From: Pavona decussata
Taxonomy: Eukaryota
Reading direction: 5' to 3'
Length of the DNA: 64,000 bases
Assembly (NCBI GenBank): GCA_977016875.1
Contig: CDRNST010000191.1
Span: 992,001-1,056,000, forward strand
The notes beneath the pieces were generated by a model, which saw nothing but the letters and a program-made list of their open reading frames with translations, ran no database searches and was not told the DNA's origin. This document shows, piece by piece, positions 6,961 to 64,000 of this stretch (within the stretch, counting starts at the first letter, position 1; each line of letters starts with the position of its first letter). Both the position numbers and the translations under genes were made by a program.

Positions 6961-9142
6961 CAAATGATCTCGTGAAAAGGTATGAAATAGGGAGAACAGT
7001 GAGATCTGTGGGAGAGTGGAATCGAATGCCATGGACAATGAATTGTCGTGGATAGTGAAATGAAGTGCAAGGAGGAATGGTGAAGACAGTGGACTGTCGT
7101 GTTAAGTGGATTTGGGTCGACAGCAGGATGCTGAGGACAGGCGAATGTCAGCTCTGCAGCGATCTGTGACTGACCTCCTAAGACAGCGTGATGGGCTGAA
7201 AAATTATTCCGGTCTGTCTTTAACCACATAAACAAACAAAGAAAAGGAAGGTAACAGCTGCCATGGATAACATCCGTGGGTACATCTTCAGAGACCCCCA
7301 AAAAAGACGACGAGCGAAAGTTTCATAGAGTGGAACGGAATGGTCCCTGAAAAGCTTTCGATCACAAATCTCTATTTCGCTAAGAAATAGGCGTCCCAGG
7401 TCTCTGAGGATGTTCTGAGTGCACCATGTGAAAATAAAGTGCGTAGATATTAGATCCAAATCTACCTTTCTTTTCCTTTCGCTTTCATATTTCGGATCTT
7501 TGTTATTCAGTACAGGGTCTAGACCCCCTTTTCGCGTATGCTTTAATTTAGAAGCTGAATGACCTAGCTAGCTTTGAAGCGCCATTAACTTAAATGCCTT
7601 TAAACGGGAGAATACTAGTGTGCGGAATGCCTTTTGTGGGTTCAACAGCAAATCGGGCGAGTACTATCAGTGCTTATTTTGCTCCAGATCAACATCAGGA
7701 GTTACTAACAACAAAACCATGCTTTAAAATACTCTAATCTTACCCTTCAATGATCAAGACATAAAATAAACAATCACCTGGTCAAACATCCCATAATTTC
7801 CCTTGATGTTAGTCCCTGGAATTTTCAGGAACCCTAGAACTCCAAGTCTGTAGTTGAAGGTGACCACGATGACGTCATTGAAGGCTGCCAACACGTGACC
7901 TGGGTACTCAGTTGAAGAACCGTGTTTAAACGCTCCACCGTGAATCCACACCATGACCGCCATCTTGGCATCGGGCTTGATGGTTGATGGCACAAACACA
8001 TTCAAGAAAAGGCAATCTTCATTTTCTGTGGAAAATAAATTGTGATCTAGTTGCGATGATTATTTTCGTTCGGCGGAGCGGAGGAAAGCAATAGTACACT
8101 TGTTAAAATTTGTTCAAACTGAATAGTTAAAAATAATTTAATGTATGGATGGGCGAAAGGAAACTCAATTGATTGAAACATGGATATCTTTCATGATAAG
8201 TTGAGATAATTTAACTTCTATACTTGCAGAACCTTTTTATGAACGGAGAAAAATCATTCATCCACCAGGAGATGGGAATATTGTTTGGTTCAAAGACCGT
8301 GATTTCTCACACTTTGTGAAAGAACTCTTCAGCGCAAAACAAAAGTAGGTAATTGTAGGTAACCTCGGCTTGAGTTCATGCCTTCCCATCAAAGATACCG
8401 TCGGGTAATGCTTGACAAATATGGAGTTAACTTAATAAGTATTGCTTTTCACATGATACTGGCGTTTTAAGTGTAAAAACCCAAGATCAATCAATCCTGA
8501 CACATTTTTATCGGATATATAACTATGACCTAACTCCCTAACCTTTTCCAACTTCACTGGTGAAATTAGGTACAGGAAACTCTGGCTGGGGACAAGCTGC
8601 TCCAAATTCTTTCACTTCTTTGATTCCTCTCCAAGGTTTGATGGGTATTGGAGCAGCAAATCTTAATATTCCGACCGGCGGTTCAGCATACGGGATACCA
8701 AGATACTCGCGCACTGATTTTCCGTATGCAAGGGCCTCGATCTTGCCAACAACTGCACCTGACTCGGTCCATACCTTGGGAGCGCTGCCATTACCTTCTT
8801 GATGCTGAAGGATTTTTGTAACATATGAGAAAATTCAGAGAAACGACAGAAAGCTTAAATGCTGCCATTTCATACCAAGCACAAATATAAGACCTAAGTG
8901 GAGTATTATTCGTGGAGTGTTGCTGGGCAACGACCGATAAAAAATTAAGTGAGGCAATGCTAGTGGATGAGGTCAGAGGTGAGGAGGTAAGCTTACAGAG
9001 TAAAAAGAAAATCTTGCAAAGCGAAATAGTTGCGGAATAAATTCAGGCTGAAAAAAATTGAAACTAAGTTGAGTCGCTACATTTATAGGTAAGATTTTAA
9101 ACACGGCCTCCAAGAAAAGCAGCATTTATGGTTTTATTATAT

Positions 9143-18105: not shown

Positions 18106-19114
18106 GTTTCACTGTTCTCGAAGACTGACTGTACATCAAAAAGAAATGGCTCTCGATCAGGATCTGTTCGGGAGATGACACCTGACTGCGGCTTCGCAAG
18201 CCCGGACAATGGAGAGTATTGGAAACATAGAAGTGTTACATTCGGTTTTTAAAAGGAGCCGAATTTATTTGCCGGTTTTCACTGTCACGCCAAAACACTT
18301 AAAATCGAAACAATTCACTGAATGATGTAAAGAGTTTATGAAAGAGTTAAAAAAGGTCTCAGGTGTAGGTATCGTCCCTTACTTGAATTATTTGGCAAAT
18401 ATTCCGCACGAATTTATAGAGCTCAGTACAGAGACGCCATATTTGTGCCCCTCCGAGGGACACAAACATAGCGGCCGGAAATCAAACAAAACATCTGGAA
18501 TCCACTTTTGCTGAAAAGGCAAAAAGTTAGTTTTCTCTCGTCAGGAGCTTATCACCCGGAGCCTCCATCTACCCTATACAGGGGCAACAGCGTATTTACA
18601 CCTTGGGCTATTTTTAGGATTGAGCATTTCCCGCGAAATTTGTTACATGATACCTTTTGCGTCCGCATTTGAACATTGAAAAAAAAATGGTGGACAGAAG
18701 GCAATAGTTTTGCAAGGAGGTGGTAGGGCAACTCCACCGTTCCAAGTCCTTTATTTTGCTCTCGTCGATTCCCCCCTTTTCCTAATAAACTACCCATGAT
18801 ACAATGCGGTGTTTTGTGATCTTCATGTACAAGAGCGATGGGAAATGGCCGGGAAGTTTGTGTCCGCGTGAAGACATTTGGGCTTGTGGAGGCGTCTTGT
18901 CTTTGAGGGGATACAGGTTTTTCGTTCATTTCCTGTTGGTTCTTTTACATTTTTACACGTTCGTATCGACTATATGAATAATAGAATTGAATTGAGGAAT
19001 ACTAAACACACCGTTGTGTGCGCTCCAGCGTGTCCGTGAATGTTAGCAAAAAGCTTGTGCAGAAGTTGATTTTCATCTTGGCTTCCGCTGCTGGTAGCGT
19101 CTTTCAACTTATAA

Positions 19115-22100
19115 ATGAAGCGTTTTGGCAAAACAGTTTTTTCAGGAGATCAGACGCAGGAAAAGTTTGCGAAAAAGAGCGACGATTCTGGATCTTGTAC
19201 GCCTTCCAACGATGGCAATGTTCCGGCCTCTACTTCGAGCTCGCCTTCGACTTCTGAAGGACGTCCTCTCTCAATAAAGAGCCTCTTGAGACAGAAAATC
19301 CAGGGAAAACTCAGTACCGAAAAGGAATCTGGTGATTCATCGAGCAGAGAACGAAGGCAACTCGACGAGTGGTGTGGGAATTTGAAAACATCTGGATTTA
19401 TTTGCGAAGTGATTTCCTTGACCGATCGTTACTCGCCATTTCTTCATGAAGAAAATAATGACATCCCTGGTTCATCAGCGTTAGTAGTTTACCCATCTAA
19501 GGATCATACGTACAGCAGTGAAACGGGACCTTTCCAGCCGGTAAGACTTGTCATTTTCCCCGATGGTTCTTGGCGTTTGCAGTGTCCTATCTATGAATTT
19601 CAGGATGTGTCAAAAGGGAAACTTTCGCCTTTCAGTTGTGAAGAAGTGCTTTCTCTAGTCTCTAGTTGGTTTACCCAGTACCACGCGTTGTGTCCTGGTC
19701 TAATTGGTCTAGAAGATGTTGAAGGTAAACTGGGTTATATTCCTAAAAATGTGAGAGTACTAGCAGACCCTGTTAAGATTGTGCAGGCGGTTTCTTGTAA
19801 AGTTTGGCATGTTCCAAGCTCCCAAGCACGTAAGGATGAGTCTGATGCAAGAAGGTTTCATGTTTGTGGAGAATGTCTCAGAGCACATAGCTATGTTCAA
19901 CGGCGAATTACTGAAAAAAACAATGTCGATACACCAACTAAATGTAAACGTCAAAGCCCTTCGAGCAACTATCCCATCAAATACCTCTCTCCGAACAGCA
20001 AACAGAAGCGCTACTCCCATCTGAAGAATGACCGACTGCGCCTTAAAAGGAGAGTTGACCGGTTCTACAAGAAGACCAAAATTGAGCTTCCAGAGAACCA
20101 ATCCATTGAGCTTTGTCAACTTGTAGAAGCCATCGAAGATTCAGAAGATGGGAAAGACGAATTGAAAAAGATAGTGATGGAAGGAAATGCATTAAAGGAC
20201 AACAAAGGAAATTCCTCTGGTGTTATCTTGGAAGAAGTGTGGAAAAAGGACCGTGTAAGTTTCTTTAAAGATCAGCAAAGAAATGGTAAGTTGTTGTATC
20301 TCTCATTAATAATTAGATTATGAGCTGAGATTAGTTCCTACTATGTGATAAATGACAAGGGCACATCCCAAATCAGCTATCGCACATAGAATTGAGAGCA
20401 AATCATTGGTCTCAATACTTTAAATAGTAAATAGTATAAATCTCCACTAAGGAAAAGGTAGATTATGATCATTAACAATGTAACAGAAATAGGTCAGGTC
20501 AGGTGCATGTGTTTGGCTTATTGCTTTTTCATTTGCTTTTTAGTAACTGGTAAAAGAGGAAACAGGTGGTCCCTGGCTACCATACGAGTTGGTAAGCTCT
20601 AAGAATGGCTTTGATTTAGAAATCTGCATCAATTTTGCTTTGAAACAACATTGTTTGATTATGTAATTCATCCTTAATTACATCCTCAATTTGCCATGCA
20701 CAGTGGAAGCCTTGGTCATACATGCAGCTTCTCTGATGTTTTGCTGCTAATATTTATGACTACCTTTATATTGTTATTGCATGGTTTTATGATTGCTTCT
20801 TAGCTCTTGCAGTTTTCACCAGAAGCCCCTCTGCATTTGACGCACTTCATGGTCTCAAAATCCTTCAGCTTCCTTGCTCTAAAGTCCTTAGGAAAGTTTT
20901 GAAAGATGGCGCCGAAAATGCTGGTATCGATGAGGAGTACCTTAAGGCACAGAGTTGTAAATTTCAAAGTTACCAAGAGCAGCGAGAGAATGACCATCAT
21001 CCTAGACCACTTGGAATTGGAGTAATGATGTGGGATGAAGTTAAGGTATATAGAGTACATATGGTTGAATTGTGATACCAAGACACATCCAGATTGTGGA
21101 TGTAGATCTGGTTCCTGATGTACCTTTGGTATTTAATTTCAGGTCCAAATGAAGGTTGCCTGGAACTTGAAGGGTGGAGGAATAACAGGCTTCACCATAC
21201 CGGAGGATGAGCTAAAAGTGCTGCATGATGTTTACACCTCCACAGTGGAAGGTGGTGCCAAGAAGGCCAGCTACATCATACAGTTCTTATGGAGAGATCT
21301 CACCTCTGGATATGATCTAGTGGGACCATATTTTCCCATTGAGGCTTCCATCACATCTAATACTCTCCAAGAATTTGTCATGCTGTGCTTGAAAGCATTC
21401 ACATCATATGGCTTCAAAGTGGCAATCATCCTGTGTGATGGAGCTTCTTCTAACCTCACAGTATTGAAGATCCTTACTGGTTATGAAAGAAAAGAACTTC
21501 CAGTAAATGAGGCAGCTGACAACTTGCGTGATAAGTTTTTCTTGGATATTTCTTTTCCTAATCCAGAGGATCCCTATGGCAGGCCCATATTTGTCATGAT
21601 ATGCCCAAGTCATCAGGTTGTAATTCTTAAGATGAACAAAAAGGTGTTCCAATTTAATAAAGTTTCAATTGGATTTTTTTTTTGTTCAGATCCAACAGCT
21701 TACAGTTTTGAAACTACTTGACAGTCCATTACCTGCACTTCTTGTTGATCTTTGCAATGATGAAAATTTACATTGTACATTATGATTTGTAATCTAGACT
21801 TGTTAGTGTTGTAAATATGATTCGACCATCACAGACACTGACAGGTAGAAATATAGTGGGAACCGAATGAACATGTTTCGGCATGAGTATGCACAAAATA
21901 ATAATATAATGATGATATATTATCATAATTTTTTTTGTTCTTTTAGCTAAAGAACATGATAGCAGCATTATACAGCTCCAGGCTTAATGGTTCCAAATCA
22001 TTCACTCGTGCGGGGTCAACATTTGGATGGGAAACCATTGAAAAGGTTTTCAGAGAAGAAATGACTAGAGCTGAAACTGGGAGAAGCCGCAAAGTGCCTG

Positions 22101-24528
22101 GACTGAAATATGCCTTTGTGTACAGAGACAACTGGACTCGTCTGAATGTGAGACCAGCCAAGATTATGCAGGTACATGATATTGGCGTGCATGAAATCGA
22201 ACCCAAGCAGTTTCAAAAATAATGCTTGGAATTAAAGTTTAGCTGTCAAAAATTAAGGACTTGAATATATGACCACATAGCTTATAGTTATATCATATGA
22301 CATTGTGCTGCCTTGCATGCAGTCTAGTCTTGTTTAGGGTACAGTTAGGCCCTCCCTAGCAGTCTAAAAATCAGGTTAAAATCACATGCGGCTCCCATTT
22401 AATAGTAAAAGATTTATACTTCTGTGCACTGATCAAGAAACAGGTAGACATGAAAATACACTGGACAGGTTTAAAATTAGTTCATTTTATGCTTACCGGT
22501 AAATGCTTCCTTTAATAATTTCAGCAACGATTTATGATAGCAGCCATCAAGGATCTCACAGGCCCATCACCACAACAAGTAGCAAGATATTTAGATGCCT
22601 GCAACCTCATTTTTGAAGAAGGATTGTTGAGTCGGCGGAGGATAAACAGTCTTCAGAGCCCTGTCCTGGCTAATATTAGAAAAGGCATGGAGTTCTTTGA
22701 AGGATGGCACAATACCCACTCTGAGACAGGTATTTATGTTTATTTATAATTTACAGAATGGTTGCTTGTTGTGCTGTGATAATGGGGTTGCATGGACAAA
22801 TTCAAACGTTTCTACCACTAGTAGGGTTACAGATGCCATGAGTGCTTTCAAATGTGCCAAACTCCCTTGAGTGTTTACAGCTCAGGATAACACAGTGGCA
22901 ATTTTGCATTTGTATTATCAGTCACATCTGACAACCCTGATCATAGTATTTATTATCCAATGACTGGTATCAGATGTAATAATTAACCCTTTTTTCACTG
23001 AGATGGAGGTGAATAGTCATGGGTATTTATACCTAGAGATTGCATAATAAATCAGAATGTGTATAAAGTACTATTTACTTCTGTGGTATATGTACAAATA
23101 AATATTGTTCATGTAAGTAATAAAGGAGTTTCAACAGGCCGCAAAATTCTTGGTATAATTGCCCTAAAATTTATTGTTGGGGTATGAATTATTGTGTACT
23201 TACACTTATTGTGTACTTACAGTAATTTTGTTCTACTTTTTTTCTTGTATTAAATAGTTTATATTTGTATATCTATTCAACAGTGTATCCTGATAACTCA
23301 AAGAAGGCAAGGCAGAAGAGATTTCTTGCTTGGCAGGTCAGTGTCACTTAATCTTTCTTTGCACTGTTCCAGCTAACATAATTTATATAATATGTGCACA
23401 TGTGTATGTGTTTGAGGTGTTTTACTGGTAAGAGACTTTGTGATGTATTGTTTGCTGTCAGCAGACACGTCTTGAAAATTATAGTATAGTTATGCTCAGT
23501 GAGCATCCACTTGAGGACTTGCATGTGAATTGAACTGCTCAATTGTATTGTAACTTTCAACGCACTAACAACATGCCACTTTTTTTCAGACATGGGACCT
23601 CCTGCGAATTGTTGTCTATGGCTTTCTTGCATTCTGTGAATGGTTTTTCACGAATGTGTCTCCAGATGGGAAGTACTTTATAAGCCCATTGAGAATAAAT
23701 GGGAGTGCTTTAGAATCTGTTTTTAGTGTTCTAAAGCACACCAGTGGGGGAAACCTTTCAGCTTTGAACTATGGGCCTAGTCTTGGGAGGTTCATTTACA
23801 GGAAAGGGCAGGTAGTTGTCAACCAAAACTCTGAGACAGGCTACCGTGATGTAACTTTGAATTTAGATGGAGAACATTCTCATGTAAATAGTCATTTAAT
23901 CCAGGTCAAAGGCAACCGTGTAAATAATAACTTATGCCAGTATAAATTCCCCTTGGAGATCTCTCAGTCAACAATAGGAGGGAGGCAAGGTAGTAATGCT
24001 TGCACTTTAATAGCGATACAATTTGGGGCATACTGTTTCAAAGAACAACTCGACATTTCTCTTCTTTGGGAACAGCTGCCTCAAATTTGGACTAATTCAT
24101 TTATCAATGCAATATGCGAAGGAAATGCACTATATGATGAACTATATGGTGACACTGCAGTGTATCTTGATGTCGAGGATGTAGTGAATGCCGCTGGTGA
24201 TGAATGCTGCATTGAGTCCATTTCCCCATTATATGGGTTTACTGATGCGGACCAGTTCAGTGAATTGATTGAGCATGTGAGCCAGTCCTTAACCAAAGAT
24301 AGGTATGGTGTTATGATAGGATGTAATCGAACTGTTGGTGTTTTCATAAAACAAAGTGGTATATGTGCACTTATTGACAGCCACCAAGACATTGGAACCA
24401 ACAGTGGGGCAGTCATATCAATAGCAAGTTCGTTTAAATTTGCAATTCTTGAATATACAAGAATGCTGAAAGATGTTCACTCAGTACAGCAGTTCACAGG
24501 CACATTAACATGGATTGAATTCATGTAA
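19115..24528 (+). CDS. P-type DDE transposase fused to a C-terminal herpes-tegument-like cysteine protease; exons 19115-20285, 20544-20591, 20804-21045, 21143-21616, 21947-22171, 22525-22729, 23284-23336, 23590-24528 (about 1,118 aa by hand count)
   Basis: All junctions are GT-AG and in frame. P/THAP9-like motifs in order: C4 cluster (LCPG..SC..CGEC), [31 protein letters not shown] (D), LCDGASSN (D), [35 protein letters not shown] (E). C-terminal domain [18 protein letters not shown]...LIDSHQD. Confidence 0.88.
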
Positions 24529-25025
24529 ATTTGTTGTGTGCCTTTTATCACTGCTTCTATGGAATATTGAAAGTATACAGTTTATGTTGTGACTTAATTT
24601 TGTACAAACAATAACAATTAATTTTATAATGAACAATGTAAGGAAATAATTTTTACCTAGGCCATGTAAATACCTTTCATACAAATAAGGGGTTACTGTA
24701 CATACTATGTTCAAATAAAGGAATTTATTACAAGCTAACTGTTGATGATACATTCATACAACAAAATTTTATTCAACGACTAGTTTTGTCTGATTGCTAA
24801 ACAAATTACGTGCCCTGATGACCCTGAGCAATGTAGAATTTACCGGAATGAAATTACAGGATATGACCAAAATCCTGCGTAGGCAAAATAAAGTTAAAGT
24901 TTGTTGTTGTTACATCATTTTTCCCACGCAGGCTTAATTTACCTCCAAAGGCCAACTCGATTAAAGCGTAATTATACCTCACGTGCCATTGCTAGTAATA
25001 TGAAGCGAGCAAGGTCATCCATTGT

Positions 25026-26372
25026 TCATTTTTTTTTGCGCTTGGAAACTATCGCGTATGATTTTAGTTTAGGTCTAAGCATTTCGTCTGCGTCCACCAC
25101 TTTTCCTTGTACTTTCAAATCTCTCTCAACTTTAGCGTTAAGAAACTCGTTTATCCTCGTGTTTGCTAGCTTCGAAACTAGTACCCGATAAAGTCTGTCT
25201 ACAACAGATGCTTCCATTGCACATTCAACTTCGGGCAGCAATGAGCCCACAAGTTCTCTAAAATCCGTTTCCAAACGCTCATTGTTTTTAACACAGTTCT
25301 GACACATTTGCAGAAACTTTGATGGGTATTTCCGCAAATTACTGTCTGTGGTGAATTCTCGAACTTCGTTGTCCACCGAACGCAAGAAAAATATAAGTTC
25401 ATCCCTAGGAAATATTAACTTGCCCGCGTCTAGGTTTTTTAAACTCTGGGAAATACCCGATTTGTCTTTCATGACAAGACCCTCCAAAATTTCCAGCTCT
25501 TTAGTCATAATAGGTCTTTTTTCAGAAGACGGTTTTATGCGCTTCTTTTTCCCAGCCAGGGATTCTCGGCGTAATTTCAACATTCTTTGAAGCGCTGCTC
25601 CACAATATCGGTACAATGTATCGTCCGATTCTTTGCTCAGCTGTCTCGCACTACTACTGCTCTCAGCAGTGGAATGCTCTTTCCGTGATCGAACGTGGTC
25701 GTGTATTAATGTGTACACCATCTCGTGGATAACACTGAGGACTGAATGAACATCCTCGTGGGAGAATGATTTGGACGCCGGCAAACAACGCTCGATAACA
25801 ATCCTCTCTTGTGACGTCTTTCCCGGCTGGAAATTAGATAACATTTTCATCCACGCTACGGAGAATGCAGCTTTCCTCTCTTTCGGTACATTACTACTAT
25901 AACACTCTTTTGATAATGTAGCGAATTTCCTGCAAAAGCCGACGATCAACAGGCTGAAATTGTCCTTCTGCCCTTCGCTTGTCAAATGCAACGCGAAGTT
26001 TCTGCGCTGTTCGAAAGCTTTCAATCTGGTTGATTCTAAAAGCCGTTGGCGCAATTCGCTTTCTACTCTCTTAGCCTCTTCGGCGGAGAAAACCCAAGAT
26101 GATAATTCATCCATTTCGGCAAAGCTGATTCCCCTTGCAACACTTTTTTCGGTAGTTTTGGCTTTTTTCTTTCGACTTCCACGTGCGGTCGTGTTCGTGG
26201 CTTGGGGTCTCTTTGTACCAGAGTTTGAACCTTTAGCCGAGGGATTCTTAGTTCCACTGTCCGTTTCAGCAGTTTCGCTTTCTGAATAGCTTGATTCTAG
26301 CGAAGAAAGTTCATCGCTGACGTTTGAAATTTCAGATTGACTATCAGAGAAGCACTCGCTTTGGTCCGCCAT
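25026..26372 (-). CDS. Transposon-encoded accessory protein (448 aa), resembling the P-transposase C-terminal domain
   Basis: Intronless ORF with an AAAATGGCG start context, inside the TIRs. Acidic/Ser-rich N-terminus, basic NLS-like runs (RKKKAK, KKKRIK, KRKKK), motifs LYRYCGAAL..K, LDAGKLIFP, KLANTRINEFLN. Confidence 0.8.
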   Translation of the reverse strand: MADQSECFSDSQSEISNVSDELSSLESSYSESETAETDSGTKNPSAKGSNSGTKRPQATNTTARGSRKKKAKTTEKSVARGISFAEMDELSSWVFSAEEAKRVESELRQRLLESTRLKAFEQRRNFALHLTSEGQKDNFSLLIVGFCRKFATLSKECYSSNVPKERKAAFSVAWMKMLSNFQPGKTSQERIVIERCLPASKSFSHEDVHSVLSVIHEMVYTLIHDHVRSRKEHSTAESSSSARQLSKESDDTLYRYCGAALQRMLKLRRESLAGKKKRIKPSSEKRPIMTKELEILEGLVMKDKSGISQSLKNLDAGKLIFPRDELIFFLRSVDNEVREFTTDSNLRKYPSKFLQMCQNCVKNNERLETDFRELVGSLLPEVECAMEASVVDRLYRVLVSKLANTRINEFLNAKVERDLKVQGKVVDADEMLRPKLKSYAIVSKRKKK

Positions 26373-27051
26373 TTTTTAATGAATGCGTAATAAAGGTAAA
26401 ATGAAAACAACCACCTGATTGGTTGAAAGCTGTGGGCGGGATAGGGGTGTGTCCGACCGCGAAATATTATCCAAGTAAAAGTGGTTCCAAAAATAACCCA
26501 AGGTGTAAATACGCTGTGTCGTAGGGTCAGTATGGGAGATGGAGGCTCCGGGTTATAAGCTCCTGCTCTCGTATAGCATTGCACATCCGCATCGACATTT
26601 ATCCAAATGCTCTAACTGTTCAGACCGCTACAAATTGTTGGAGAAGTTACCTTTTTTTTTTTTGTTCTTTTAATATCAGCATCTTTGTCACGGAAGTCGT
26701 CTTATTGTCACGCCTGTGTAAAGTGGAAAATTCAAAATGCCCTATTTTCAAAGTGAAGGAGGCTCAAAACTTGTCAGAAGAGATGTTTAAAAGAGATGTT
26801 TACAGTTCATTTTACGACTGCTGATGATAAAATTTCGGAAAGCTTCCCGGTTTTGTTTTTATAATTCGATGACGTCACACGAAAAAGACGGCAAAATAAT
26901 GTTGTGTGACCAACTCCACAGCTGCTTACTAAGAAAAAAGACGGACGCGACGTCGTTCATGATATGATTATAACGAGAGGTAGGTAATTTTCAATGTGGA
27001 ATCGTGAAGATATTGTCCCGGTCACATAAAGACAATTTATCATGGTGTTGT

Positions 27052-28396: not shown

Positions 28397-31300
28397 TTAC
28401 AACTCATCTTTCGGTGCCTTTTCCTCTTCTCCTTTTCCCTCTTTTTCGTCATTTCTCGTTAACTTCATTACCTTAGGAACAAGGTCATTCCAAAACGCCA
28501 TGTTGCTCGCCTTGTACCTACGTTCAACCCTAGGTTTCAACTCAAGAACTAGGTATGCCTGCTCTTCTTCTGTAAATGTAGGCCACGTGACCGGTGTAGG
28601 ACCAGAGTCGGGTGGATTTGGAGAACTGCAAAGTACAGGTTTCCTTGAATAATTTGAGAATTTCCTTCTAACATTCATGACTAAACACTTATACATCAGA
28701 CCTCAGTTTAATCCACCTTGGTCAACGAGAAGCCAGATGTTACCGCGCCAGAGAATCATCTGCTCAGTAGAAACAAGTCTCACTGAAAAACGCATGCTTC
28801 ACGCGAAAACTGTAATCACTAAAACAATTTAAAAAACAACTGGAGAATGCTACGCTTAAAGATATTTTAAAGGAAAATGTTTGTGGTAAAGTCACCAAAA
28901 TTGACAATAATGCTCGGCTAACTGTTAGCGGGCCAAAAGACCATAGTAAACGGGAGCCTGGAAGGACAGAGCACTCAGCACAACTCTCNNNNNNNNNNNN
29001 NNNNNNNNNNNNNNNNNNNNNNNNNNNNNNNNNNNNNNNNNNNNNNNNNNNNNNNNNNNNNNNNNNNNNNNNNNNNNNNNNNNNNNNNNNNNNNNNNNNN
29101 NNNNNNNNNNNNNNNNNNNNNNNNNNNNNNNNNNNNNNNNNNNNNNNNNNNNNNNNNNNNNNNNNNNNNNNNNNNNNNNNGACTACGATGAATTATTTCT
29201 CGCTATATGCTGGTTAGTATTGGAATATACTAAAACAGTAAGTCACCTTAGAGTCGTTGAGTGAATATCCAGCATGCACGATCCACCTCCAATTCAACGA
29301 ATAATTGTAAAACTTAAATCGAACCTAGTTTAATGACCTTAGCTCCCACGAGTCTCGGAAGGTCATTGGTTCGATTCCTGTTGGAAGCACTCGGATTTTC
29401 TTTTCCCGAGTATGCCTGTGTCACTGACTGAAAAAATATTTCGATCATTTTATCGTATACTTACCCATATTTGGCAAAGTCTGTCCACAGCTTCATGACG
29501 TACAAACTGAATCCCTTTTCTGTGTCGGAAAAATTGCTCGTCCCAAAATTTAATGGACCAGGTATATTCATCAATGGCACACCAAAAACAAAAGGGACGT
29601 CTTCTGCATGGGTGGCACCAGCCCACTCGGGAAAAGTCGAGAAGACTGGTTTGTGGTCGAACACAAAAACATAAGGCGGGCGTCCTCCCTGCATATTCAA
29701 ACAATTAAATGTTTTAATTATTAAAACAGAAACCAAAAAAAAAAAAAAACAGAAAAGCAAGCAATCAATAATAATAATGATGATGACAAGGTGGTGCTAA
29801 CGTTTGCGTCCGCGAAGGAACATAACTGATTCCAAGCGCTTTTGGATTTGCCAGCGCTATATAATTTGTAATGGTAACGCTTTGTAGCTCCGAGTGATAG
29901 GAGTCATAGAGTGGTTTTCAATAATTGAGTGTCCAAAGTAATTTGCCTTTGCTTTGGTTTTGCTTTAATACGCACGCCAATTTTTCAACCAGTGAGAAGA
30001 AAACCAAAACCAATCGTAACTTGGACTCACGTGTTTCCCCGCGCTTGGCACTAGTTTGATTTATTTGCTCCGAATTCTGATTGGTCCATTTAATTTGTGT
30101 TTGTCGTGATTGGTCAGAGTACTAACTTCGGTTTTGATATTGGGATACTTAAATGAAAACCGCTCTGATAATAAACCAATTTCTATCTAAAAGTGACATG
30201 AAAGAAAGAAATGTTTCCATGTACTGGTTTACCTTTGCTAAGGCTTTAGCCTCTTGAAGAGCAGGGGCCACAAACAGTGCGTCACCGAAGCAATCTACCC
30301 ACGACTGCCGAATGGCGATTTTATCGTCAGGGTCATCATGGTTGCTGTATTGGAACAAAATCAAGTCTTCGATGATCCGGCTTTTCTTTCGAGCGTAAAA
30401 CATTTCATTCTTAACGAAGTACTCAAAGTGCTTTCGATCCATTCCATGTTTTATCTGGTCAGGAGGCTGTAGCAAACTGAAAAAGGATCCTTCGCTGGAA
30501 GCAAAACCAGTTATGGCATCGCTATCATGGAATTTGCCTGCTTTGAATAAGTTTTCTGGCAGATCGGGGAGAAATTCGCCATCAACTATAGGCGCTACGA
30601 TGTCTTGTGGGCCAGTGTATTTATCACGATAGAAGGAACCTTGTGCCTCTAAAATTTCCTCAACCGTCTTACCTCGGACGCACTCCACAATGTCTGGCCC
30701 CAAGCTGCAATTAATAGCTCTAGCAAACCACTCTAGCTGTTGAGGTTTAGAAACTTTTCCGCCGAAACCTGGTATCAAGGATGAACCACTCTGTGCAATG
30801 GTTCTGCTAAAAAGACCTTTAGACAGAGGCGATATTCGATGAAAGGAAGCACTTATTCCTCCTGCGCTCTCACCAAATATGGTCACTCGCTTGGGATCTC
30901 CGCCAAAACTGGCTATGTTGGCTTGAACCCATTTTAATGCTAGCACCTTGATGGGCATACAAAAAGAGAACAAATTAACTGGACTTATCACGAATACAAA
31001 TCGCTGCATCAGTCAATTCCAACAATCTCCACACCCCTCCTCGGGTAACTTCAGTTGCATAAAAAAAATGATAACAAAAGCACCATGGGAGGGGGAGGGG
31101 GGTGGGAAAGCACGAGAAGAGAAGGGATCGTCTTCTAAACGCTTGAAGTGTTTTGTGGATCTACTATTTCTTATTTTTAACTTAAGCGATTGACTGTACA
31201 GGTACTTTTACTCAAGATGATAACTAAGTTAGTTCTGAAAACTGAGAAATTCACAGTAAGGTATGCTACCTGATCGAACATCCCATAATTTCCTTTTACA

Positions 31301-42220: not shown

Positions 42221-43685
42221 GGAGTTGGCAAGCGAGTTAAACAAACTTTGGGCGATTTGGTTATTGATTTGAGACAAATTATTGGCTGTTTTTTGTTGTT
42301 GTTGTTGCTGTTTTTCAAAGTAAATCGTCTTTGTATTAGCCTAGCATCAGTTTCGATCAGCACTTTACCTCTAAACTAGGGGTTTCGCCTGGTTAGAAAT
42401 AGAATGCCCTATTTGAAGTTGAACCAAGAATTTTGAAGTCAGTCAGGTTATAGTCGGGATAACCACTCATTGCTCAACAACTTTCTTGTAATAACTTTGT
42501 TTTAATCGATCTAACAATGAATCAATGAAGCAGTTTACAACGAAACTTAAACCATGTTTTTCTAAGACTAAAGTTCAAATGTGAACGAGAGGGGCACGAG
42601 AAAGAGCAGAAAAGATATTGCGAGCCCCGAAAAGAAAAGGACCACTACCCAGCCTATGTGTAGCCTCTGTTGGCGTTTTCATCCACTCCCGCTCCCCTCT
42701 CCTCTCATTTGTTCCTTTTCGCACCCCATTAGGTTTCGCGCGCACCACGCTGTTGCGGAAAGAAAGGTTTGCTGAATTCAAAGGAAACAAGCAAGTCATT
42801 AAGTGATTTAAGGCTATTATGTACTTGAAACCTGGATCGTGGCAAATCCCGGACATCGAAATTTAAGTCATGCAATGGTCTCAATTACCGCAGGTTTTCA
42901 CAGGCTCATGAAAGATCAAGTGGTCAAATACATAGTTGCTTATCGCCACCTTTAAAAGAGCCGCTATCAAAAGAAGTATTGCCAAAACGAGCAATTCGAA
43001 CGCGATTTGGATGATTTTTGGCCGAGATATTGTAGAGCGAAGGTCTTTGATTTTAGCCGTGAATAATTTATTGTATTTTATCGTGTTTTGGACCCCAAGA
43101 AAACGCAACAGCTACAAACTCTTGACAGAGATCCTGTGGTGTGCCTTTAAAAGCTTGACTTCGATAGATTGAAAATCCCAGTGAACAAATATGAAGGCGA
43201 GATACGAGCCCGAGGCGTTCCTGGAAAGTTGGTTATGCTGTTTTCAGCCTTCCGCCATACTGTCCTGTCAGTGATGACTGAATTACTCGAATCCGTTTTT
43301 ATCTCCAAAATGTACACCGTGAATCGGTTTCGATCTACCTGAAAATTGCTGTTTCTGAACCACAACGGTGACTTTCAGGAATGAACCTGGTAAAATCAAA
43401 CAATCGCATGGAAGTGCGGCCAGCTGAGGTGAAAGACGACAACTTAAGGAATTTACCACATAAATAGAAGGTTTAGTGAGCTACAGGAGAGCTAAAATCA
43501 CGTACAGTCTAAAAATGTACGGTGTTTACGTTCTGGTGTAGATATAATATTCATACAGTGGGAATATGGACACTTTCCACTGATGGATTCCGACCTGGCA
43601 ACTGTTACAGGTACACAGGAAGTTTTTCTCTCCCCAGATGAAAGAAAAAGCAATCGGTACATATATATCTATTATTGATATATGG

Positions 43686-43805
43686 GTTCCTAACTCGGTT
43701 CCCAACTCGGTTCCTAACTTGGTTCCTAACTCAGTTCCTAACTCGGTTCCCAACTCGGTTCCTAACTCGGTTCCTAACTCGGTTCCCAACTCGGTTCCTG
43801 ACTCG
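43686..43805 (-). repeat. 12-bp minisatellite, inverted partner of 42127-42220
   Basis: (GTTCC[T/C]AACTCG)n, about 10 units. Confidence 0.9.
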
Positions 43806-54484: not shown

Positions 54485-55790
54485 CTCTGGATACTCTCTT
54501 CAACACTAACCCTTCATCCGGTCCCTTCTACCCAACCTTGTTTCTCCCCCTTCTGAAGCGAAGTGAGTTGTTTCACAGTTGTAAAGATCTCTATTCTCAG
54601 TTTAAAGTCAACCTGAAACACTTCGCAGGCTGGCCAAAGTTTTCAATATTTTATATACTTACGAGAAAAAACATTGTCTTCTCCCGTTCCCCCCCCCCCC
54701 CCCCTCCCCCGTCCGCATATTTGATGACCATTATGACGACAAACGGTTGATAAAAATCTTAAACAAATTGACGCAGATTCAGGAATTAAGAATTCAGACA
54801 AAACATGGAATAACTGGTCAAATATAAACCGCACGCAAAGCGCCATTGTCAGATATCTAACTATGTCTTTGTCAACGCAATAGAATCCAATATTTAAGCC
54901 ATTTGCGTATTTTCCAACATTACCTCGTATCTAATCCAGAAAAAGTTACAAGCAACAAAGCGTTCACCATTTTGATCAATATCGACCTCTATTTATCGAT
55001 TATCGATGGAGGACCATCGTTGAGTAGTCAGGCAATGTGGCGACAAATTAAAATTGAGAGAACATGTCGAGAAAACAGCTGATTTGATTTGCCTCTAAAC
55101 TCTCACAACCCACATCGAAGAAGTCTATAGAAAAGCACGAAGGAGAATAATAATTTTCAAAGGATTAATTAACACCTACTTAAAAGCCACACAACTTTTT
55201 AAGTTAAGTTCCTCAGTTTCCTCGAGTTATCTAATGAATCTCAATTTGTTGTTACTTTTCTACATCGTTCTGATGGTTTAAAACAGCTGTAGAAAAGAAT
55301 CGGTCGCCTGCGAAGTTTTAGTTTTGAGAACTTTTGTTTACTTTCAGTAAAACAAAGACATTTTTTTCTGAATATCTATTCATGGCATTTTATGAATACA
55401 TAATGAAGCGATTCTTTTATTCACTTATTGACATGAATAAACAACTTCGCTTTGCTATGTGACCTTTATGTTTTTAACACTTGAAGCGCGCTCACGTCTC
55501 TAAACACAAGATGACTGGCTTCTAGAAACAACCATTTAAAGTTCGTGTTTTTAAGCTCTTAGAGGGTGGATATTACGCCAACAGCCTTTACACGGTCATG
55601 AGGCCGTCGACAAATTAAATTAGCTCAAACAAAAGCTCTTAGGGGCTCATGTTTATGTAATGTAGCTAGGAGCATTCTTGTGATAGAGAGTTGAAACTCC
55701 GTTCAAGCGTGAATGAGCAGCCAAAGCTAGTGAGTGTTGTTTGAATCGCTTACTGACAAACATGTTTACACCCAAGAAGGCAAGTGCAAC

Positions 55791-62711: not shown

Positions 62712-64000
62712 CAGGAGCTTATCACCCGGAGCCTCCATCTACCCTATACAGGGGCAACAGCGTATTTACACCTTGGGCTATTTTTAGGATTGAGCATTTC
62801 CCGCGAAATTTGTTACATGATACCTTTTGCGTCCGCATTTGAACATTGAAAAAAAAATGGTGGACAGAAGGCAATAGTTTTGCAAGGAGGTGGTAGCGCA
62901 ACTCCACCGTTCCAAGTCCTTTATTTTGCTCTCGTCGATTCCCCCCTTTTCCTAATAAACTACCCATGATACAATGCGGTGTTTTGTGATCTTCATGTAC
63001 AAGAGCGATGGGAAATGGCCGGGAAGTTTGTGTCCGCGTGAAGACATTTGGGCTTGTGGAGGCGTCTTGTCTTTGAGGGGATACAGGTTTTTCGTTCATT
63101 TCCTGTTGGTTCTTTTACATTTTTACACGTTCGTATCGACTATATGAATAATAGAATTGAATTGAGGAATACTAAACACACCGTTGTGTGCGCTCCAGCG
63201 TGTCCGTGAATGTTAGCAAAAAGCTTGTGCAGAAGTTGATTTTCATCTTGGCTTCCGCTGCTGGTAGCGTCTTTCAACTTATAAATGAAGCGTTTTGGCA
63301 AAACAGTTTTTTCAGGAGATCAGACGCAGGAAAAGTTTGCGAAAAAGAGCGACGATTCTGGATCTTGTACGCCTTCCAACGATGGCAATGTTCCGGCCTC
63401 TACTTCGAGCTCGCCTTCGACTTCTGAAGGACGTCCTCTCTCAATAAAGAGCCTCTTGAGACAGAAAATCCAGGGAAAACTCAGTACCGAAAAGGAATCT
63501 GGTGATTCATCGAGCAGAGAACGAAGGCAACTCGACGAGTGGTGTGGGAATTTGAAAACATCTGGATTTATTTGCGAAGTGATTTCCTTGACCGATCGTT
63601 ACTCGCCATTTCTTCATGAAGAAAATAATGACATCCCTGGTTCATCAGCGTTAGTAGTTTACCCATCTAAGGATCATACGTACAGCAGTGAAACGGGACC
63701 TTTCCAGCCGGTAAGACTTGTCATTTTCCCCGATGGTTCTTGGCGTTTGCAGTGTCCTATCTATGAATTTCAGGATGTGTCAAAAGGGAAACTTTCGCCT
63801 TTCAGTTGTGAAGAAGTGCTTTCTCTAGTCTCTAGTTGGTTTACCCAGTACCACGCGTTGTGTCCTGGTCTAATTGGTCTAGAAGATGTTGAAGGTAAAC
63901 TGGGTTATATTCCTAAAAATGTGAGAGTACTAGCAGACCCTGTTAAGATTGTGCAGGCGGTTTCTTGTAAAGTTTGGCATGTTCCAAGCTCCCAAGCACG
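62712..64000 (+). mobile_element. Second copy of the P-like transposon (left end; runs off the window)
   Basis: Starts exactly at the TIR CAGGAGCTTATCACCC and is collinear with 18542-19830 at offset 44170. I saw one substitution (18727 G versus 62897 C). The flank differs (GTTTCCC). Confidence 0.95.
63285..64000 (+). CDS. Transposase exon 1 of the second copy (partial)
   Basis: Matches 19115 onward ([13 protein letters not shown]...) and stays open to the window end. Confidence 0.88.
   Translation, partial: MKRFGKTVFSGDQTQEKFAKKSDDSGSCTPSNDGNVPASTSSSPSTSEGRPLSIKSLLRQKIQGKLSTEKESGDSSSRERRQLDEWCGNLKTSGFICEVISLTDRYSPFLHEENNDIPGSSALVVYPSKDHTYSSETGPFQPVRLVIFPDGSWRLQCPIYEFQDVSKGKLSPFSCEEVLSLVSSWFTQYHALCPGLIGLEDVEGKLGYIPKNVRVLADPVKIVQAVSCKVWHVPSSQA

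What the first reader, a model, noticed from the sequence alone, without database searches (positions are those of the whole stretch)
18542..26565. Two-gene, tail-to-tail P-superfamily transposon with unusual cargo (candidate undescribed element family)
Seen: an 8,024-bp unit with CA...TG TIRs and a 7-bp TSD, holding an intact 8-exon transposase (+) and an intact 448-aa ORF (-). They converge on a ~500-bp spacer with AATAAA signals on both strands (about 24714 +, about 24770 -). Established: canonical P/Galileo/THAP9 elements have one gene (THAP, RNase H with GTP-binding insertion, CTD) and 7-8-bp TSDs; a convergent two-gene layout is known from ProtoRAG. Inference: this lineage lost THAP, moved the CTD-like module to a separate gene and gained a protease, giving a two-component transposition system. 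I cannot confirm novelty without a search.
Basis: partly seen in the sequence, partly recalled or inferred. Interest (0 to 1): 0.92.

Follow-up and report, generated by a model that had tools for sequence, protein, structure and literature searches.

The report
Two-gene P-like transposon with deubiquitinase
This is a real, recently active jumping gene in a stony-coral genome whose P-element-like cutting enzyme carries a built-in ubiquitin-removing protease and always travels with a second, unknown helper gene, a layout I did not find described for this kind of transposon.

Summary
Window 18542-26565 is an 8,024-bp element with imperfect terminal inverted repeats (TIRs) starting CAGGAGC, a 7-bp duplication of the target site (CTCTCGT), and a second 99.9% identical copy starting at 62712.

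It carries two convergent genes:
- An 8-exon, about 1,124-aa transposase. Its RNase H core matches Pfam TNP-like_RNaseH_N, the P element/THAP9 type. The catalytic D, D and E residues are intact. No THAP domain is detected.
- An intronless 448-aa all-helical protein, ORF2.

The "protease" is real and can be named. The transposase C-terminus is a viral-tegument-like deubiquitinase (VTD), with invariant Cys and the family's Asp-x-His motif, supported by fold and profile matches to 8ADC/8ADB/2J7Q.

ORF2 is not incidental cargo. 15 of 16 loci fetched through ORF2 relatives, and one fetched through the transposase, keep the convergent pair. This holds down to about 25% identity, with 7-bp duplications. 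Compact relatives lack the VTD but keep ORF2, so the gene pair is the core and the VTD a later addition.

ORF2 as a detached P-type C-terminal domain (CTD) is not shown: Pfam, PDB and fold searches were negative. I found no published description, but Repbase and Dfam could not be searched. Verdict: a new variant of a known kind.

Novelty: my literature searches found no such family. A 2022 paper already notes that cnidarian VTD domains are fused to transposon-associated domains. Repbase and Dfam could not be queried.

The parts
18535..18541 (.). Left copy of the 7-bp target-site duplication, CTCTCGT
   Evidence: Read directly. Identical to 26566-26572.
18542..18700 (+). Left end. The TIR proper is about 18542-18615. 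Blocks conserved across genera are CAGGAGC, GGAGC and TATTTTTAG, plus an E2F-like box TTTCCCGCGAAA at 18627-18638. Weaker inverted similarity to the right end continues to 18700.
   Evidence: Inverted repeats I1, I2 and I4. Alignment of 10 termini from 6 families or genera (A7). Pattern scan.
19115..20285 (+). Transposase exon 1. The start MKR is conserved. It holds a putative Zn-binding module (C228, H232, C251, C254 of the exon, at 19784-19876) that is not THAP, then a basic and coiled-coil-like region.
   Evidence: ORF list. Conserved blocks. Alignment A4 of 13 homologues. No Pfam THAP hit. Donor GTAAGT at 20286.
20544..20591 (+). Transposase exon 2 (GKRGNRWS, start of the helix-turn-helix region)
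   Evidence: Conserved in L002, L004, L010, L012 and L015-L019. Splice sites.
20813..21045 (+). Transposase exon 3: helix-turn-helix region and the first catalytic Asp (MWDEVK, D at 21034-21036). The acceptor could instead be at 20803.
   Evidence: The motif (M/I)(W/F)DEVKV is conserved in all relatives aligned.
21143..21643 (+). Transposase exon 4: RNase H N-terminal half with the second catalytic Asp (LCDGASSN, D at 21437-21439) and a C(2)H motif (CPSH, 21602-21613). The donor could instead be at 21617 or 21620.
   Evidence: Pfam PF21787 TNP-like_RNaseH_N, E 3.9e-7, 30.9 bits against a cut-off of 24.6. Same hit in relatives. hhalign to a canonical P-like transposase, probability 92.5%, E 5e-7. 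Coordinates.
21947..22171 (+). Transposase exon 5 (part of the domain inserted between the second Asp and the Glu)
   Evidence: 76-79% identical to the coral relatives, 38-55% to the distant ones where the exon is kept. No Pfam hit.
22525..22729 (+). Transposase exon 6 (insertion domain)
   Evidence: The exon 6-7-8 junctions agree with an NCBI gene model of a Montipora relative, P0144.
23284..23336 (+). Transposase exon 7 ([10 protein letters not shown]...)
23590..24528 (+). Transposase exon 8. It holds the catalytic Glu (NGSALES, E at 23713-23715), a low-confidence linker, and the VTD deubiquitinase domain (about 23893-24525; Gln 23965-67, Cys 24001-03, Asp-Ser-His 24376-84). Stop TAA at 24526-24528.
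   Evidence: Alignment A1 with invariant Q130, C142, D267, H269. AF2 model, pLDDT above 90 over most of residues 111-316. Foldseek 8adc_B E 1.9e-6 and 2j7q_A E 7.8e-6. PDB profile hit to 8adb/8adc, E 5.2e-5. Coordinates.
24529..25025 (.). 497-bp convergent spacer with AATAAA at 24714-24719 (plus strand) and 24773-24768 (minus strand)
   Evidence: Read directly. These are motif matches only.
25026..26372 (-). ORF2: intronless, 448 aa. It has an acidic Ser/Thr-rich disordered N-terminus, basic NLS-like stretches, and an all-helical core (about residues 80-430). It is the conserved partner of the transposase.
   Evidence: ORF list. 80 homologues. 742 cluster representatives. AF2 model. Synteny. 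dN 0.44-0.48 with saturated synonymous sites.
26489..26565 (-). Right TIR
26566..26572 (.). Right copy of the target-site duplication, CTCTCGT
62712..64000 (+). Left 1,289 bp of a second copy, cut off by the end of the window
   Evidence: 99.92% identity to 18542-19830. Terminus read.

Best explanation
This is an autonomous, recently active cut-and-paste DNA transposon in a scleractinian coral genome. It belongs to a divergent lineage whose transposase core is of the P element/THAP9 type.

Shown:
- The element has TIRs starting CA(G/A)GAG and makes 7-bp target-site duplications.
- It is multi-copy and nearly identical between copies.
- Gene 1 is spliced from 8 exons into a protein of about 1,124 aa. 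It has a non-THAP Cys/His module, a helix-turn-helix region, and a DDE RNase H core interrupted by an inserted domain.
- Gene 1 ends in a VTD-type cysteine deubiquitinase with all catalytic residues intact.
- Gene 2 (ORF2) is a 448-aa helical protein. It sits tail-to-tail with gene 1, about 190 bp inside the other end.
- The pair is kept in every lineage sampled, including compact elements without the VTD domain.

Inferred:
- Each gene is transcribed inward from a promoter in its own terminal region. The two ends share about 160 bp of inverted similarity and a conserved E2F-like box.
- The transposase binds the conserved TIR blocks through its N-terminal module, cuts and rejoins DNA with the DDE site, and staggers the target cut by 7 bp.
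- ORF2 is a required accessory subunit or helper. It could act in nuclear import, in assembling or targeting the transposition complex, or in integration. Comparable helpers are MURB, the Harbinger Myb-like protein and RAG2-like.
- The VTD domain removes ubiquitin from the transposase, ORF2 or host chromatin and repair factors. This would stabilise the machinery or blunt host restriction.
For: - Mobility: TIRs and TSD. A second copy at 99.92% identity. Five 9.98-kb copies at 99.6-99.7% identity in different genomic contexts, each with its own 7-bp TSD. Further TSDs in L010, L012 and L016.
- P-like core: PF21787 above Pfam's cut-off in the window and in L002, L004, L015 and L017. hhalign to a canonical P-like transposase at 92.5% probability. 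D, D, C(2)H and E motifs conserved in all relatives aligned. A 7-bp TSD is known from Galileo in the P superfamily (PMC4168063).
- VTD: invariant Q, C and D-x-H. Fold matches with E 1.9e-6 to 3.8e-5 at probability 1.0. Profile-sequence match at E 5.2e-5 aligning both the Cys and the D-x-H. D-x-H is the family hallmark (PMC9741609).
- ORF2 as an integral partner: a convergent transposase lies beside ORF2 in 15 of 16 loci fetched through ORF2 relatives. An ORF2 homologue lies beside the transposase in the one element fetched through exon 8, L012.
- Joint divergence: ORF2 identity falls in step with the transposase, from 52-55% to 25-29%.
- Selection: nonsynonymous divergence is 0.44-0.48 while synonymous sites are saturated.
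- Size of the family: 742 cluster representatives, and none of the 150 listed is longer than 475 aa.
Against: - No RNA evidence supports the splice model or shows that either gene is expressed.
- Only the N-terminal half of the P-type RNase H is recognised by Pfam. THAP, the GTP-binding insertion domain, RNaseH_C and the P CTD are not detected. The motif after the second Asp is C(2)H, not the D(2)H reported for P.
- ORF2 has no detectable relative of known function or fold, so its role rests on analogy.
- One locus, L001 in Desmophyllum, has ORF2 with its adjacent terminus but no transposase within 10 kb.
- Loci were chosen from long contigs, so the 15/16 count is not an unbiased sample.
Confidence: 0.75

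Rival explanations
1. ORF2 is the C-terminal domain of a P-type transposase that became a separate gene. The element would then encode a split transposase whose two parts reassemble.
For: - The transposase of the compact relatives ends soon after the catalytic Glu. A canonical P CTD is not detected anywhere in gene 1.
- The order of conserved blocks in the ORF2 family (LYR..GAAL, LD.G.L.FP, VD..VRE, KL.NTR.NEF) resembles what I recall of P/THAP9 C-terminal regions. That recollection is from memory only.
- hhalign of the ORF2 profile to an ORF converging on a canonical P-like transposase gives E 0.0055.
Against: - No PF12596 hit in 26 diverse members at E up to 10.
- No P element transposase in PDB profile searches.
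- No fold match among the 50 best rows listed of 500 in the PDB search, best E 0.17.
- The hhalign probability is only 6.6%, and the target ORF itself has no Pfam CTD hit.
Confidence: 0.25
2. ORF2 is incidental cargo: a host gene captured by one transposon lineage and carried without any role in transposition.
For: ORF2 has no recognisable transposition-related domain. One solo copy exists in Desmophyllum (L001).
Against: - ORF2 keeps the same position and orientation in lineages that differ by about 75% in protein sequence. These include both VTD-bearing and VTD-less elements.
- It diverges in step with the transposase.
- It is under purifying selection.
- Internally deleted copies keep it (L003, L010, L011, L012).
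- The solo copy still has the element's terminus beside it.
Confidence: 0.05
3. ORF2 is a regulator or repressor that limits copy number, like the P element repressor isoforms, and not a positive co-factor.
For: Nothing in the sequence decides between activation and repression. Convergent transcription across a spacer of 30 to 500 bp could yield antisense RNA. MuDR does this (PMC3440606).
Against: - A pure repressor is not expected to be retained in every autonomous lineage over such divergence.
- Non-autonomous deletion derivatives lose transposase exons but keep ORF2. That fits either a needed factor or a repressor, so it does not decide the question.
Confidence: 0.2
4. The clade is not part of the P superfamily. 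It would be a separate superfamily whose RNase H core only distantly resembles P.
For: - Only PF21787 is detected, at modest scores of 29-33 bits.
- There is no THAP, GTP-binding domain, RNaseH_C or CTD hit.
- The motif is C(2)H instead of D(2)H.
- PDB sequence searches do not reach the P transposase.
Against: - PF21787 was the only Pfam family to pass its curated cut-off for the core exon in all five copies tested.
- hhalign to a canonical P-like protein aligns the LCDGAS motif.
- The 7-bp TSD and CA...TG termini fit P and Galileo.
- Exon 1's Cys-x2-Cys, basic and coiled-coil region also matches the canonical P-like neighbour (tblastn E 0.002; sequence).
Confidence: 0.15

Closest known systems
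P superfamily (Drosophila P element, Galileo, 1360, vertebrate THAP9/Pdre)
   Same: RNase H core of the TNP-like type (PF21787). DDE triad with an inserted domain between the second Asp and the Glu. A helix-turn-helix region before the core. TSDs of 7 bp, as in Galileo. CA...TG termini.
   Different: - No THAP domain. A different Cys/His module sits in its place.
- C(2)H instead of D(2)H.
- No Pfam-detectable GTP-binding domain, RNaseH_C or CTD.
- A C-terminal VTD deubiquitinase.
- A second, convergent gene. The canonical elements named here have one gene.
MuDR (maize Mutator): mudrA and mudrB
   Same: Two convergently transcribed genes inside TIRs, each next to one end, with promoters in the TIRs (PMC3440606). 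The second protein has unknown biochemistry.
   Different: - The transposase superfamily is unrelated (MULE), with 9-bp TSDs.
- mudrB is restricted to Zea, whereas ORF2 here is kept across a deep clade.
- TIR promoters are only inferred here.
ProtoRAG / Transib with RAG1-like and RAG2-like genes
   Same: A tail-to-tail gene pair inside TIRs, with a catalytic subunit plus an obligatory non-catalytic partner. This rests on established knowledge, not on a test here.
   Different: The DDE superfamily is different (Transib, 5-bp TSD). RAG2-like is a kelch/PHD protein, whereas ORF2 is all-helical with no detectable relation to it.
PIF/Harbinger (transposase plus Myb/SANT-like protein)
   Same: A two-protein system in which the second protein is needed for nuclear import and recruitment to the ends. 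This rests on established knowledge.
   Different: Different transposase and a 3-bp TSD. ORF2 has no significant Myb/SANT hit; the only hit is a tri-helical HTH_CHD6-9 match at E 0.05-0.07, below the cut-off.
Transposon-borne ubiquitin and ubiquitin-like proteases: VTD in Helentrons, OTU/Ulp1 in Ginger1, Ulp1 in MULEs
   Same: A papain-fold deubiquitinase or deSUMOylase fused to, or encoded with, the transposition protein (PMC9741609; PMC2836005). The VTD catalytic signature is identical.
   Different: Here the host protein is a P-like DDE transposase. The 2022 VTD paper places most non-viral VTDs in Helitron/Helentron RepHel proteins. It only remarks that cnidarian VTDs are fused to transposon-associated domains.

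Membership tests
P superfamily of DNA transposons | Transposase RNase H core homologous to P element/THAP9 (Pfam TNP-like_RNaseH_N) | tested here: met
   PF21787 at E 3.9e-7 (window), 9.4e-7, 1.9e-7, 1.2e-6 and 7.9e-8 in relatives, all above the 24.6-bit cut-off. hhalign to a canonical P-like ORF at probability 92.5%.
P superfamily of DNA transposons | Target-site duplication of 7-8 bp | tested here: met
   7-bp TSDs at nine insertions: the window, L004-L008, L010, L012 and L016. At L007 the flanks share 8 bp. Galileo makes 7 bp.
P superfamily of DNA transposons | N-terminal THAP (C2CH) DNA-binding domain | tested here: not met
   No PF05485 hit in exon 1 of the window or of L012. No precomputed Pfam hit in 20 exon-1 homologues. 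The conserved ligands are ordered C-x3-H ... C-x2-C, not C-x2-4-C ... C-x2-H.
P superfamily of DNA transposons | DDE triad with a D(2)H motif after the second Asp | tested here: inconclusive
   D (MWDEVK), D (LCDGASSN) and E (NGSALES) are conserved. The motif at the equivalent place is C(2)H (CPSH), not D(2)H. A canonical neighbour in L015 has SDVPH.
P superfamily of DNA transposons | GTP-binding insertion domain | tested here: inconclusive
   Roughly 270 residues from the end of exon 4 to the start of exon 8 occupy the right place. No PF21788 hit was found.
P superfamily of DNA transposons | C-terminal RNase H part and P-type CTD (PF21789, PF12596) | tested here: inconclusive
   No Pfam hit. 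hhalign of the exon-8 profile to a PF21789-bearing ORF aligns [12 protein letters not shown] with SERLSQDPLES, but only at E 0.045 and probability 1.2%.
P superfamily of DNA transposons | Single transposase gene | tested here: not met
   Two convergent genes in all lineages sampled.
VTD (viral tegument-like) deubiquitinases, peptidase C76-like | Papain-like fold matching M48 and the VTD crystal structures | tested here: met
   Foldseek: 8adc_B E 1.9e-6 (TM normalised to the target 0.60), 2j7q_A E 7.8e-6, 8add E 8.2e-6, all at probability 1.00. The model's pLDDT is above 90 over most of the domain.
VTD (viral tegument-like) deubiquitinases, peptidase C76-like | Catalytic Cys, with invariant Asp-x-His supplying the His and Asp | tested here: met
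   C142, D267 and H269 are invariant and S268 nearly invariant in 31 sequences. HMMER aligns GSNACT with GKSACT and IDSH with FDPH of 8adb. The motif is defined in PMC9741609.
VTD (viral tegument-like) deubiquitinases, peptidase C76-like | Cleavage of ubiquitin chains | not testable with these tools
   Needs a recombinant domain tested with Ub-AMC, di-ubiquitin panels and ubiquitin-like probes.
Two-component DNA transposons (MuDR, Harbinger, ProtoRAG type) | The second protein is required for, or modulates, transposition | not testable with these tools
   Only conservation of synteny and purifying selection could be shown.

The most novel reading that the evidence does not exclude
The P-like transposase and ORF2 form an obligatory two-subunit transposase. 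On this reading they define a large branch of the P superfamily that I did not find described: 742 ORF2 clusters at 50% identity, in stony corals and in unnamed assemblies whose source organisms I could not identify. Within this branch, a coral subclade then fused a herpesvirus-type deubiquitinase to the catalytic subunit to escape ubiquitin-dependent host control.
Probability: 0.35. Interest if true: 0.8.

Novelty: new variant of a known kind. Interest (0 to 1): 0.62.

Why it matters
- P elements are a textbook one-gene system. A deep, species-rich sister lineage that always carries a second protein would add a new case of a two-component eukaryotic transposase, alongside RAG1/RAG2-like, Harbinger and MuDR. 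It would also give a tractable system for asking what such partners do.
- The fusion of a DDE transposase to a VTD deubiquitinase widens the known link between transposition and the ubiquitin system. It also gives a second transposon route, besides Helentrons, by which this herpesvirus-type protease could have spread.
- The copies look recently active: 99.6-99.9% identity with intact reading frames. The family may therefore be a live mutagen in reef-building corals and a candidate genetic tool for cnidarians.

Tried and rejected
- PDB sequence searches with exon 4 alone, with exon 8 alone, and with a 4-sequence exon-4 profile found nothing.
- Pfam at E up to 10 on exons 5, 6 and 8 and on ORF2 gave nothing useful.
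- Foldseek of the ORF2 model against the PDB and BFVD gave only noise: best E 0.17 and 0.02, with TM below 0.2.
- PDB profile searches with the ORF2 profiles A3 and A6 and with the exon-1 profile A4 gave only insignificant hits, such as tubulin cofactor A at E 0.069 and APC11 at E 1.1.
- I looked for a paralogous empty site inside the window. The flanks do have 72-85% identical patches at 920-1692, but the interval around the insertion point does not align.
- The Gryllus and L014 relatives of the VTD domain carry no transposase or ORF2 nearby. They say nothing about the element.
- P0144 (Montipora) is not in the contig index.
- The coral MITE paper describes piggyBac-type TTAA elements and is unrelated.
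- No subterminal repeat arrays were found in the left 573 bp.
- TTTSSCGC is not enriched window-wide: 9 matches against 5.9 expected.
- Cluster look-ups gave no organism names for 20 distant ORF2 members.
- Considered and rejected: Dada (6-7 bp TSD), because the nine insertion sites are unrelated sequences and no tRNA or Rfam RNA gene was found in the window. Kolobok, hAT and Zisupton were rejected on TSD length and on the Pfam result.

Full report
**Scope and rules.**
- The window is eukaryotic. The relatives that carry a species name are stony corals: Desmophyllum pertusum, Acropora digitifera, Porites lobata and Montipora.
- I took no contig to be human.
- The N run at 28989-29180 was left as it is.
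- The transposase is a spliced model. Every search, alignment and fold was done exon by exon, by reference. The joined protein was never searched, folded, printed or saved.
- The only use of a joined sequence was an in-script count of stop codons.

**1. The observation.**
- The element starts CAGGAGC at 18542 and ends GCTCCTG at 26565, which is 8,024 bp. It is flanked by CTCTCGT at 18535-18541 and at 26566-26572.
- The ends pair as 35 nt at 91%, then 29 nt at 97%, then a further 27-nt block at 78% about 130-160 bp inside.
- The terminal 29-mer occurs three times in the window and never in 100 shuffles.
- The third occurrence, at 62712, starts a second copy. It is 99.92% identical over the 1,289 bp that remain before the window ends.
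- ORF2 is an open 448-codon frame on the minus strand, 25026-26372.
- Comparison with an Acropora copy marks eight conserved plus-strand coding blocks.
- GT-AG introns that keep the frame exist for all seven gaps. Together they give 1,124 codons without a stop.
- The exon 6-7-8 junctions agree with an NCBI gene model of a Montipora relative.

**2. It is a mobile family.**
- One unnamed assembly holds five full copies of 9.98 kb, 99.6-99.7% identical. They lie next to GPCR genes, a Mab-21 gene, retroelements and a virus-like block. Each has its own 7-bp duplication: GCTAGAT, TTATGGT, GAATGAT, CTGTGGA and ATGTAAT.
- Further 7-bp duplications flank a deleted copy (L010, ACATAAC), a distant subfamily (L012, AATACGG) and a compact relative (L016, GTGGTGC).
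- Termini from six families or genera share CAGGAGC, GGAGC, TATTTTTAG and, in most ends, a TTTCCCGCGAAA-like box.

**3. The transposase.**
- Exon 4 hits Pfam TNP-like_RNaseH_N above the curated cut-off. So do its counterparts in four other lineages.
- A canonical P-like transposase lies beside one of the relatives (PF21787 at 1.6e-29, PF21789 at 6e-9). It aligns to exon 4 with 92.5% probability over the LCDGAS motif.
- The motifs [18 protein letters not shown] and NGSALES are conserved in all relatives aligned. They correspond to the D, D, [C/D](2)H and E of P-type enzymes.
- Not detected: THAP, the GTP-binding insertion domain, RNaseH_C and the P CTD.
- Exon 1 instead has conserved C-x3-H ... 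C-x2-C residues followed by a basic, coiled-coil-like stretch.
- I therefore call the enzyme P-like but not canonical.

**4. The protease.**
- An alignment of 31 exon-8 homologues has invariant Q130, C142, D267 and H269.
- The AlphaFold model is confident over residues 111-316.
- Foldseek returns the "viral tegument-like DUB" crystal structures and the cytomegalovirus M48 protease as its top six hits, with E 1.9e-6 to 3.8e-5.
- A profile-sequence search independently finds 8adb/8adc at E 5.2e-5. It aligns both the catalytic Cys and the Asp-x-His.
- The paper that defined the family names Asp-x-His as its hallmark. It places most non-viral members in Helentrons. It mentions only in passing that cnidarian VTDs are fused to transposon-associated domains.
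- C-terminal ubiquitin or SUMO proteases on transposases are a known theme, as in Ginger1 and MULEs.

**5. ORF2.**
- It has 80 close homologues, all unnamed or "hypothetical".
- A profile of its core finds 742 cluster representatives. None of the 150 listed is longer than 475 aa.
- The model is all-helical, with a disordered acidic Ser/Thr-rich N-terminus. It matches nothing in the PDB or BFVD.
- Synteny is the strong result. In 15 of 16 loci fetched through ORF2 relatives, a P-like transposase converges on it. The one element fetched through exon 8 has an ORF2 homologue in the same place, at 29% identity and hhalign E 7e-40.
- Identity to the window's ORF2 falls from 52-55% to 25-29%, in step with the transposase.
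- The most distant elements are compact: L015 and L016 are 4.6 kb, and the genes of L017-L019 are packed as tightly. Their transposase stops shortly after the catalytic Glu, so they have no VTD, yet they keep ORF2.
- Between families, synonymous sites are saturated while dN is 0.44-0.48.
- ORF2 is therefore an integral and ancient component. The VTD is either an addition in a coral subclade or a loss elsewhere.

**6. Is ORF2 a detached CTD?**
- No Pfam CTD hit appears in 26 diverse members.
- No P transposase appears in the PDB profile searches.
- There is no fold match.
- A 356-aa ORF converges on the canonical P-like transposase in L015. It aligns weakly to the ORF2 profile (E 0.0055, probability 6.6%) over the LD.G.L.FP block.
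- This is a lead, not evidence.

**7. Mechanism.**
- Shown: the anatomy, the mobility, the intact catalytic residues of both enzymes, and the conserved gene pair.
- Inferred: inward transcription from the two related ends; end recognition by the exon-1 module; cut-and-paste with a 7-bp stagger; ORF2 as helper or second subunit; and deubiquitination that protects the machinery or modifies repair and chromatin factors.

**8. Novelty.**
- My literature searches found no two-gene P-like family and no P-like transposase fused to a VTD.
- Repbase and Dfam were not available.
- I rate it a new variant of a known kind, with interest 0.62.

Noticed in passing
L015:14455-18251: A canonical P-like transposase on the minus strand (PF21787 at 1.6e-29, PF21789 at 6e-9, D(2)H motif) lies directly beside the compact two-gene element. 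A 356-aa plus-strand ORF converges on it and aligns weakly to the ORF2 family profile. This may be a second kind of convergent pair in a more typical P lineage.
   Followed up: partly
window:42127-42223 and 43685-43805: Two tandem arrays of a 12-bp unit that are reverse complements of each other (AACCGAGTTAGG x8 and GGTTCCTAACTC x10), 1.5 kb apart. They look like the ends of another inverted-repeat element.
   Followed up: no
window:18627-18638, 62797-62808; the same relative position in L001, L002, L004 and L010: An E2F-like box (TTTCCCGCGAAA / TTTCGCGC) about 85-100 bp from most termini is conserved across genera. It hints at cell-cycle-linked promoters in the ends. The motif is not enriched window-wide.
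   Followed up: partly
window:5818-6603, 30149-31009, 55734-57845: Two carboxylesterase-family ORFs on the minus strand flank the element at a distance, probably tandem paralogues. A rhodopsin-type GPCR ORF of 703 aa is also present.
   Followed up: partly
L004:1-9650: A run of intronless ORFs, including a Pox_A32-like packaging ATPase and a faint Endonuclease_7 hit, lies next to one transposon copy. It is a virus-like or polinton-like insert in the coral assembly. I only noticed it and did nothing with it.
   Followed up: no
L002:7567-9810 and 18225-18386: The Acropora copy has a duplicated ORF2-side terminus (7700 and 9810) with a partial second ORF2 (8029-8898). The 133 bp outside 7700 are the reverse complement of the flank after the other end (162-nt arms, 99%). 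This is either an aberrant transposition or rearrangement, or an assembly artefact.
   Followed up: partly
L001:9818-11329: The Desmophyllum ORF2 (annotated as a hypothetical protein) keeps its adjacent transposon terminus. It has no transposase and no second terminus within 10 kb, so it is a truncated copy or a candidate for domestication.
   Followed up: partly
window:18674-18700 vs 26359-26385: The inverted similarity of the two ends runs through the ORF2 start codon. The left end carries a decayed mirror image of it (ATGGTGGACAGAAGG...TAG). This suggests both ends derive from one promoter-bearing sequence.
   Followed up: no
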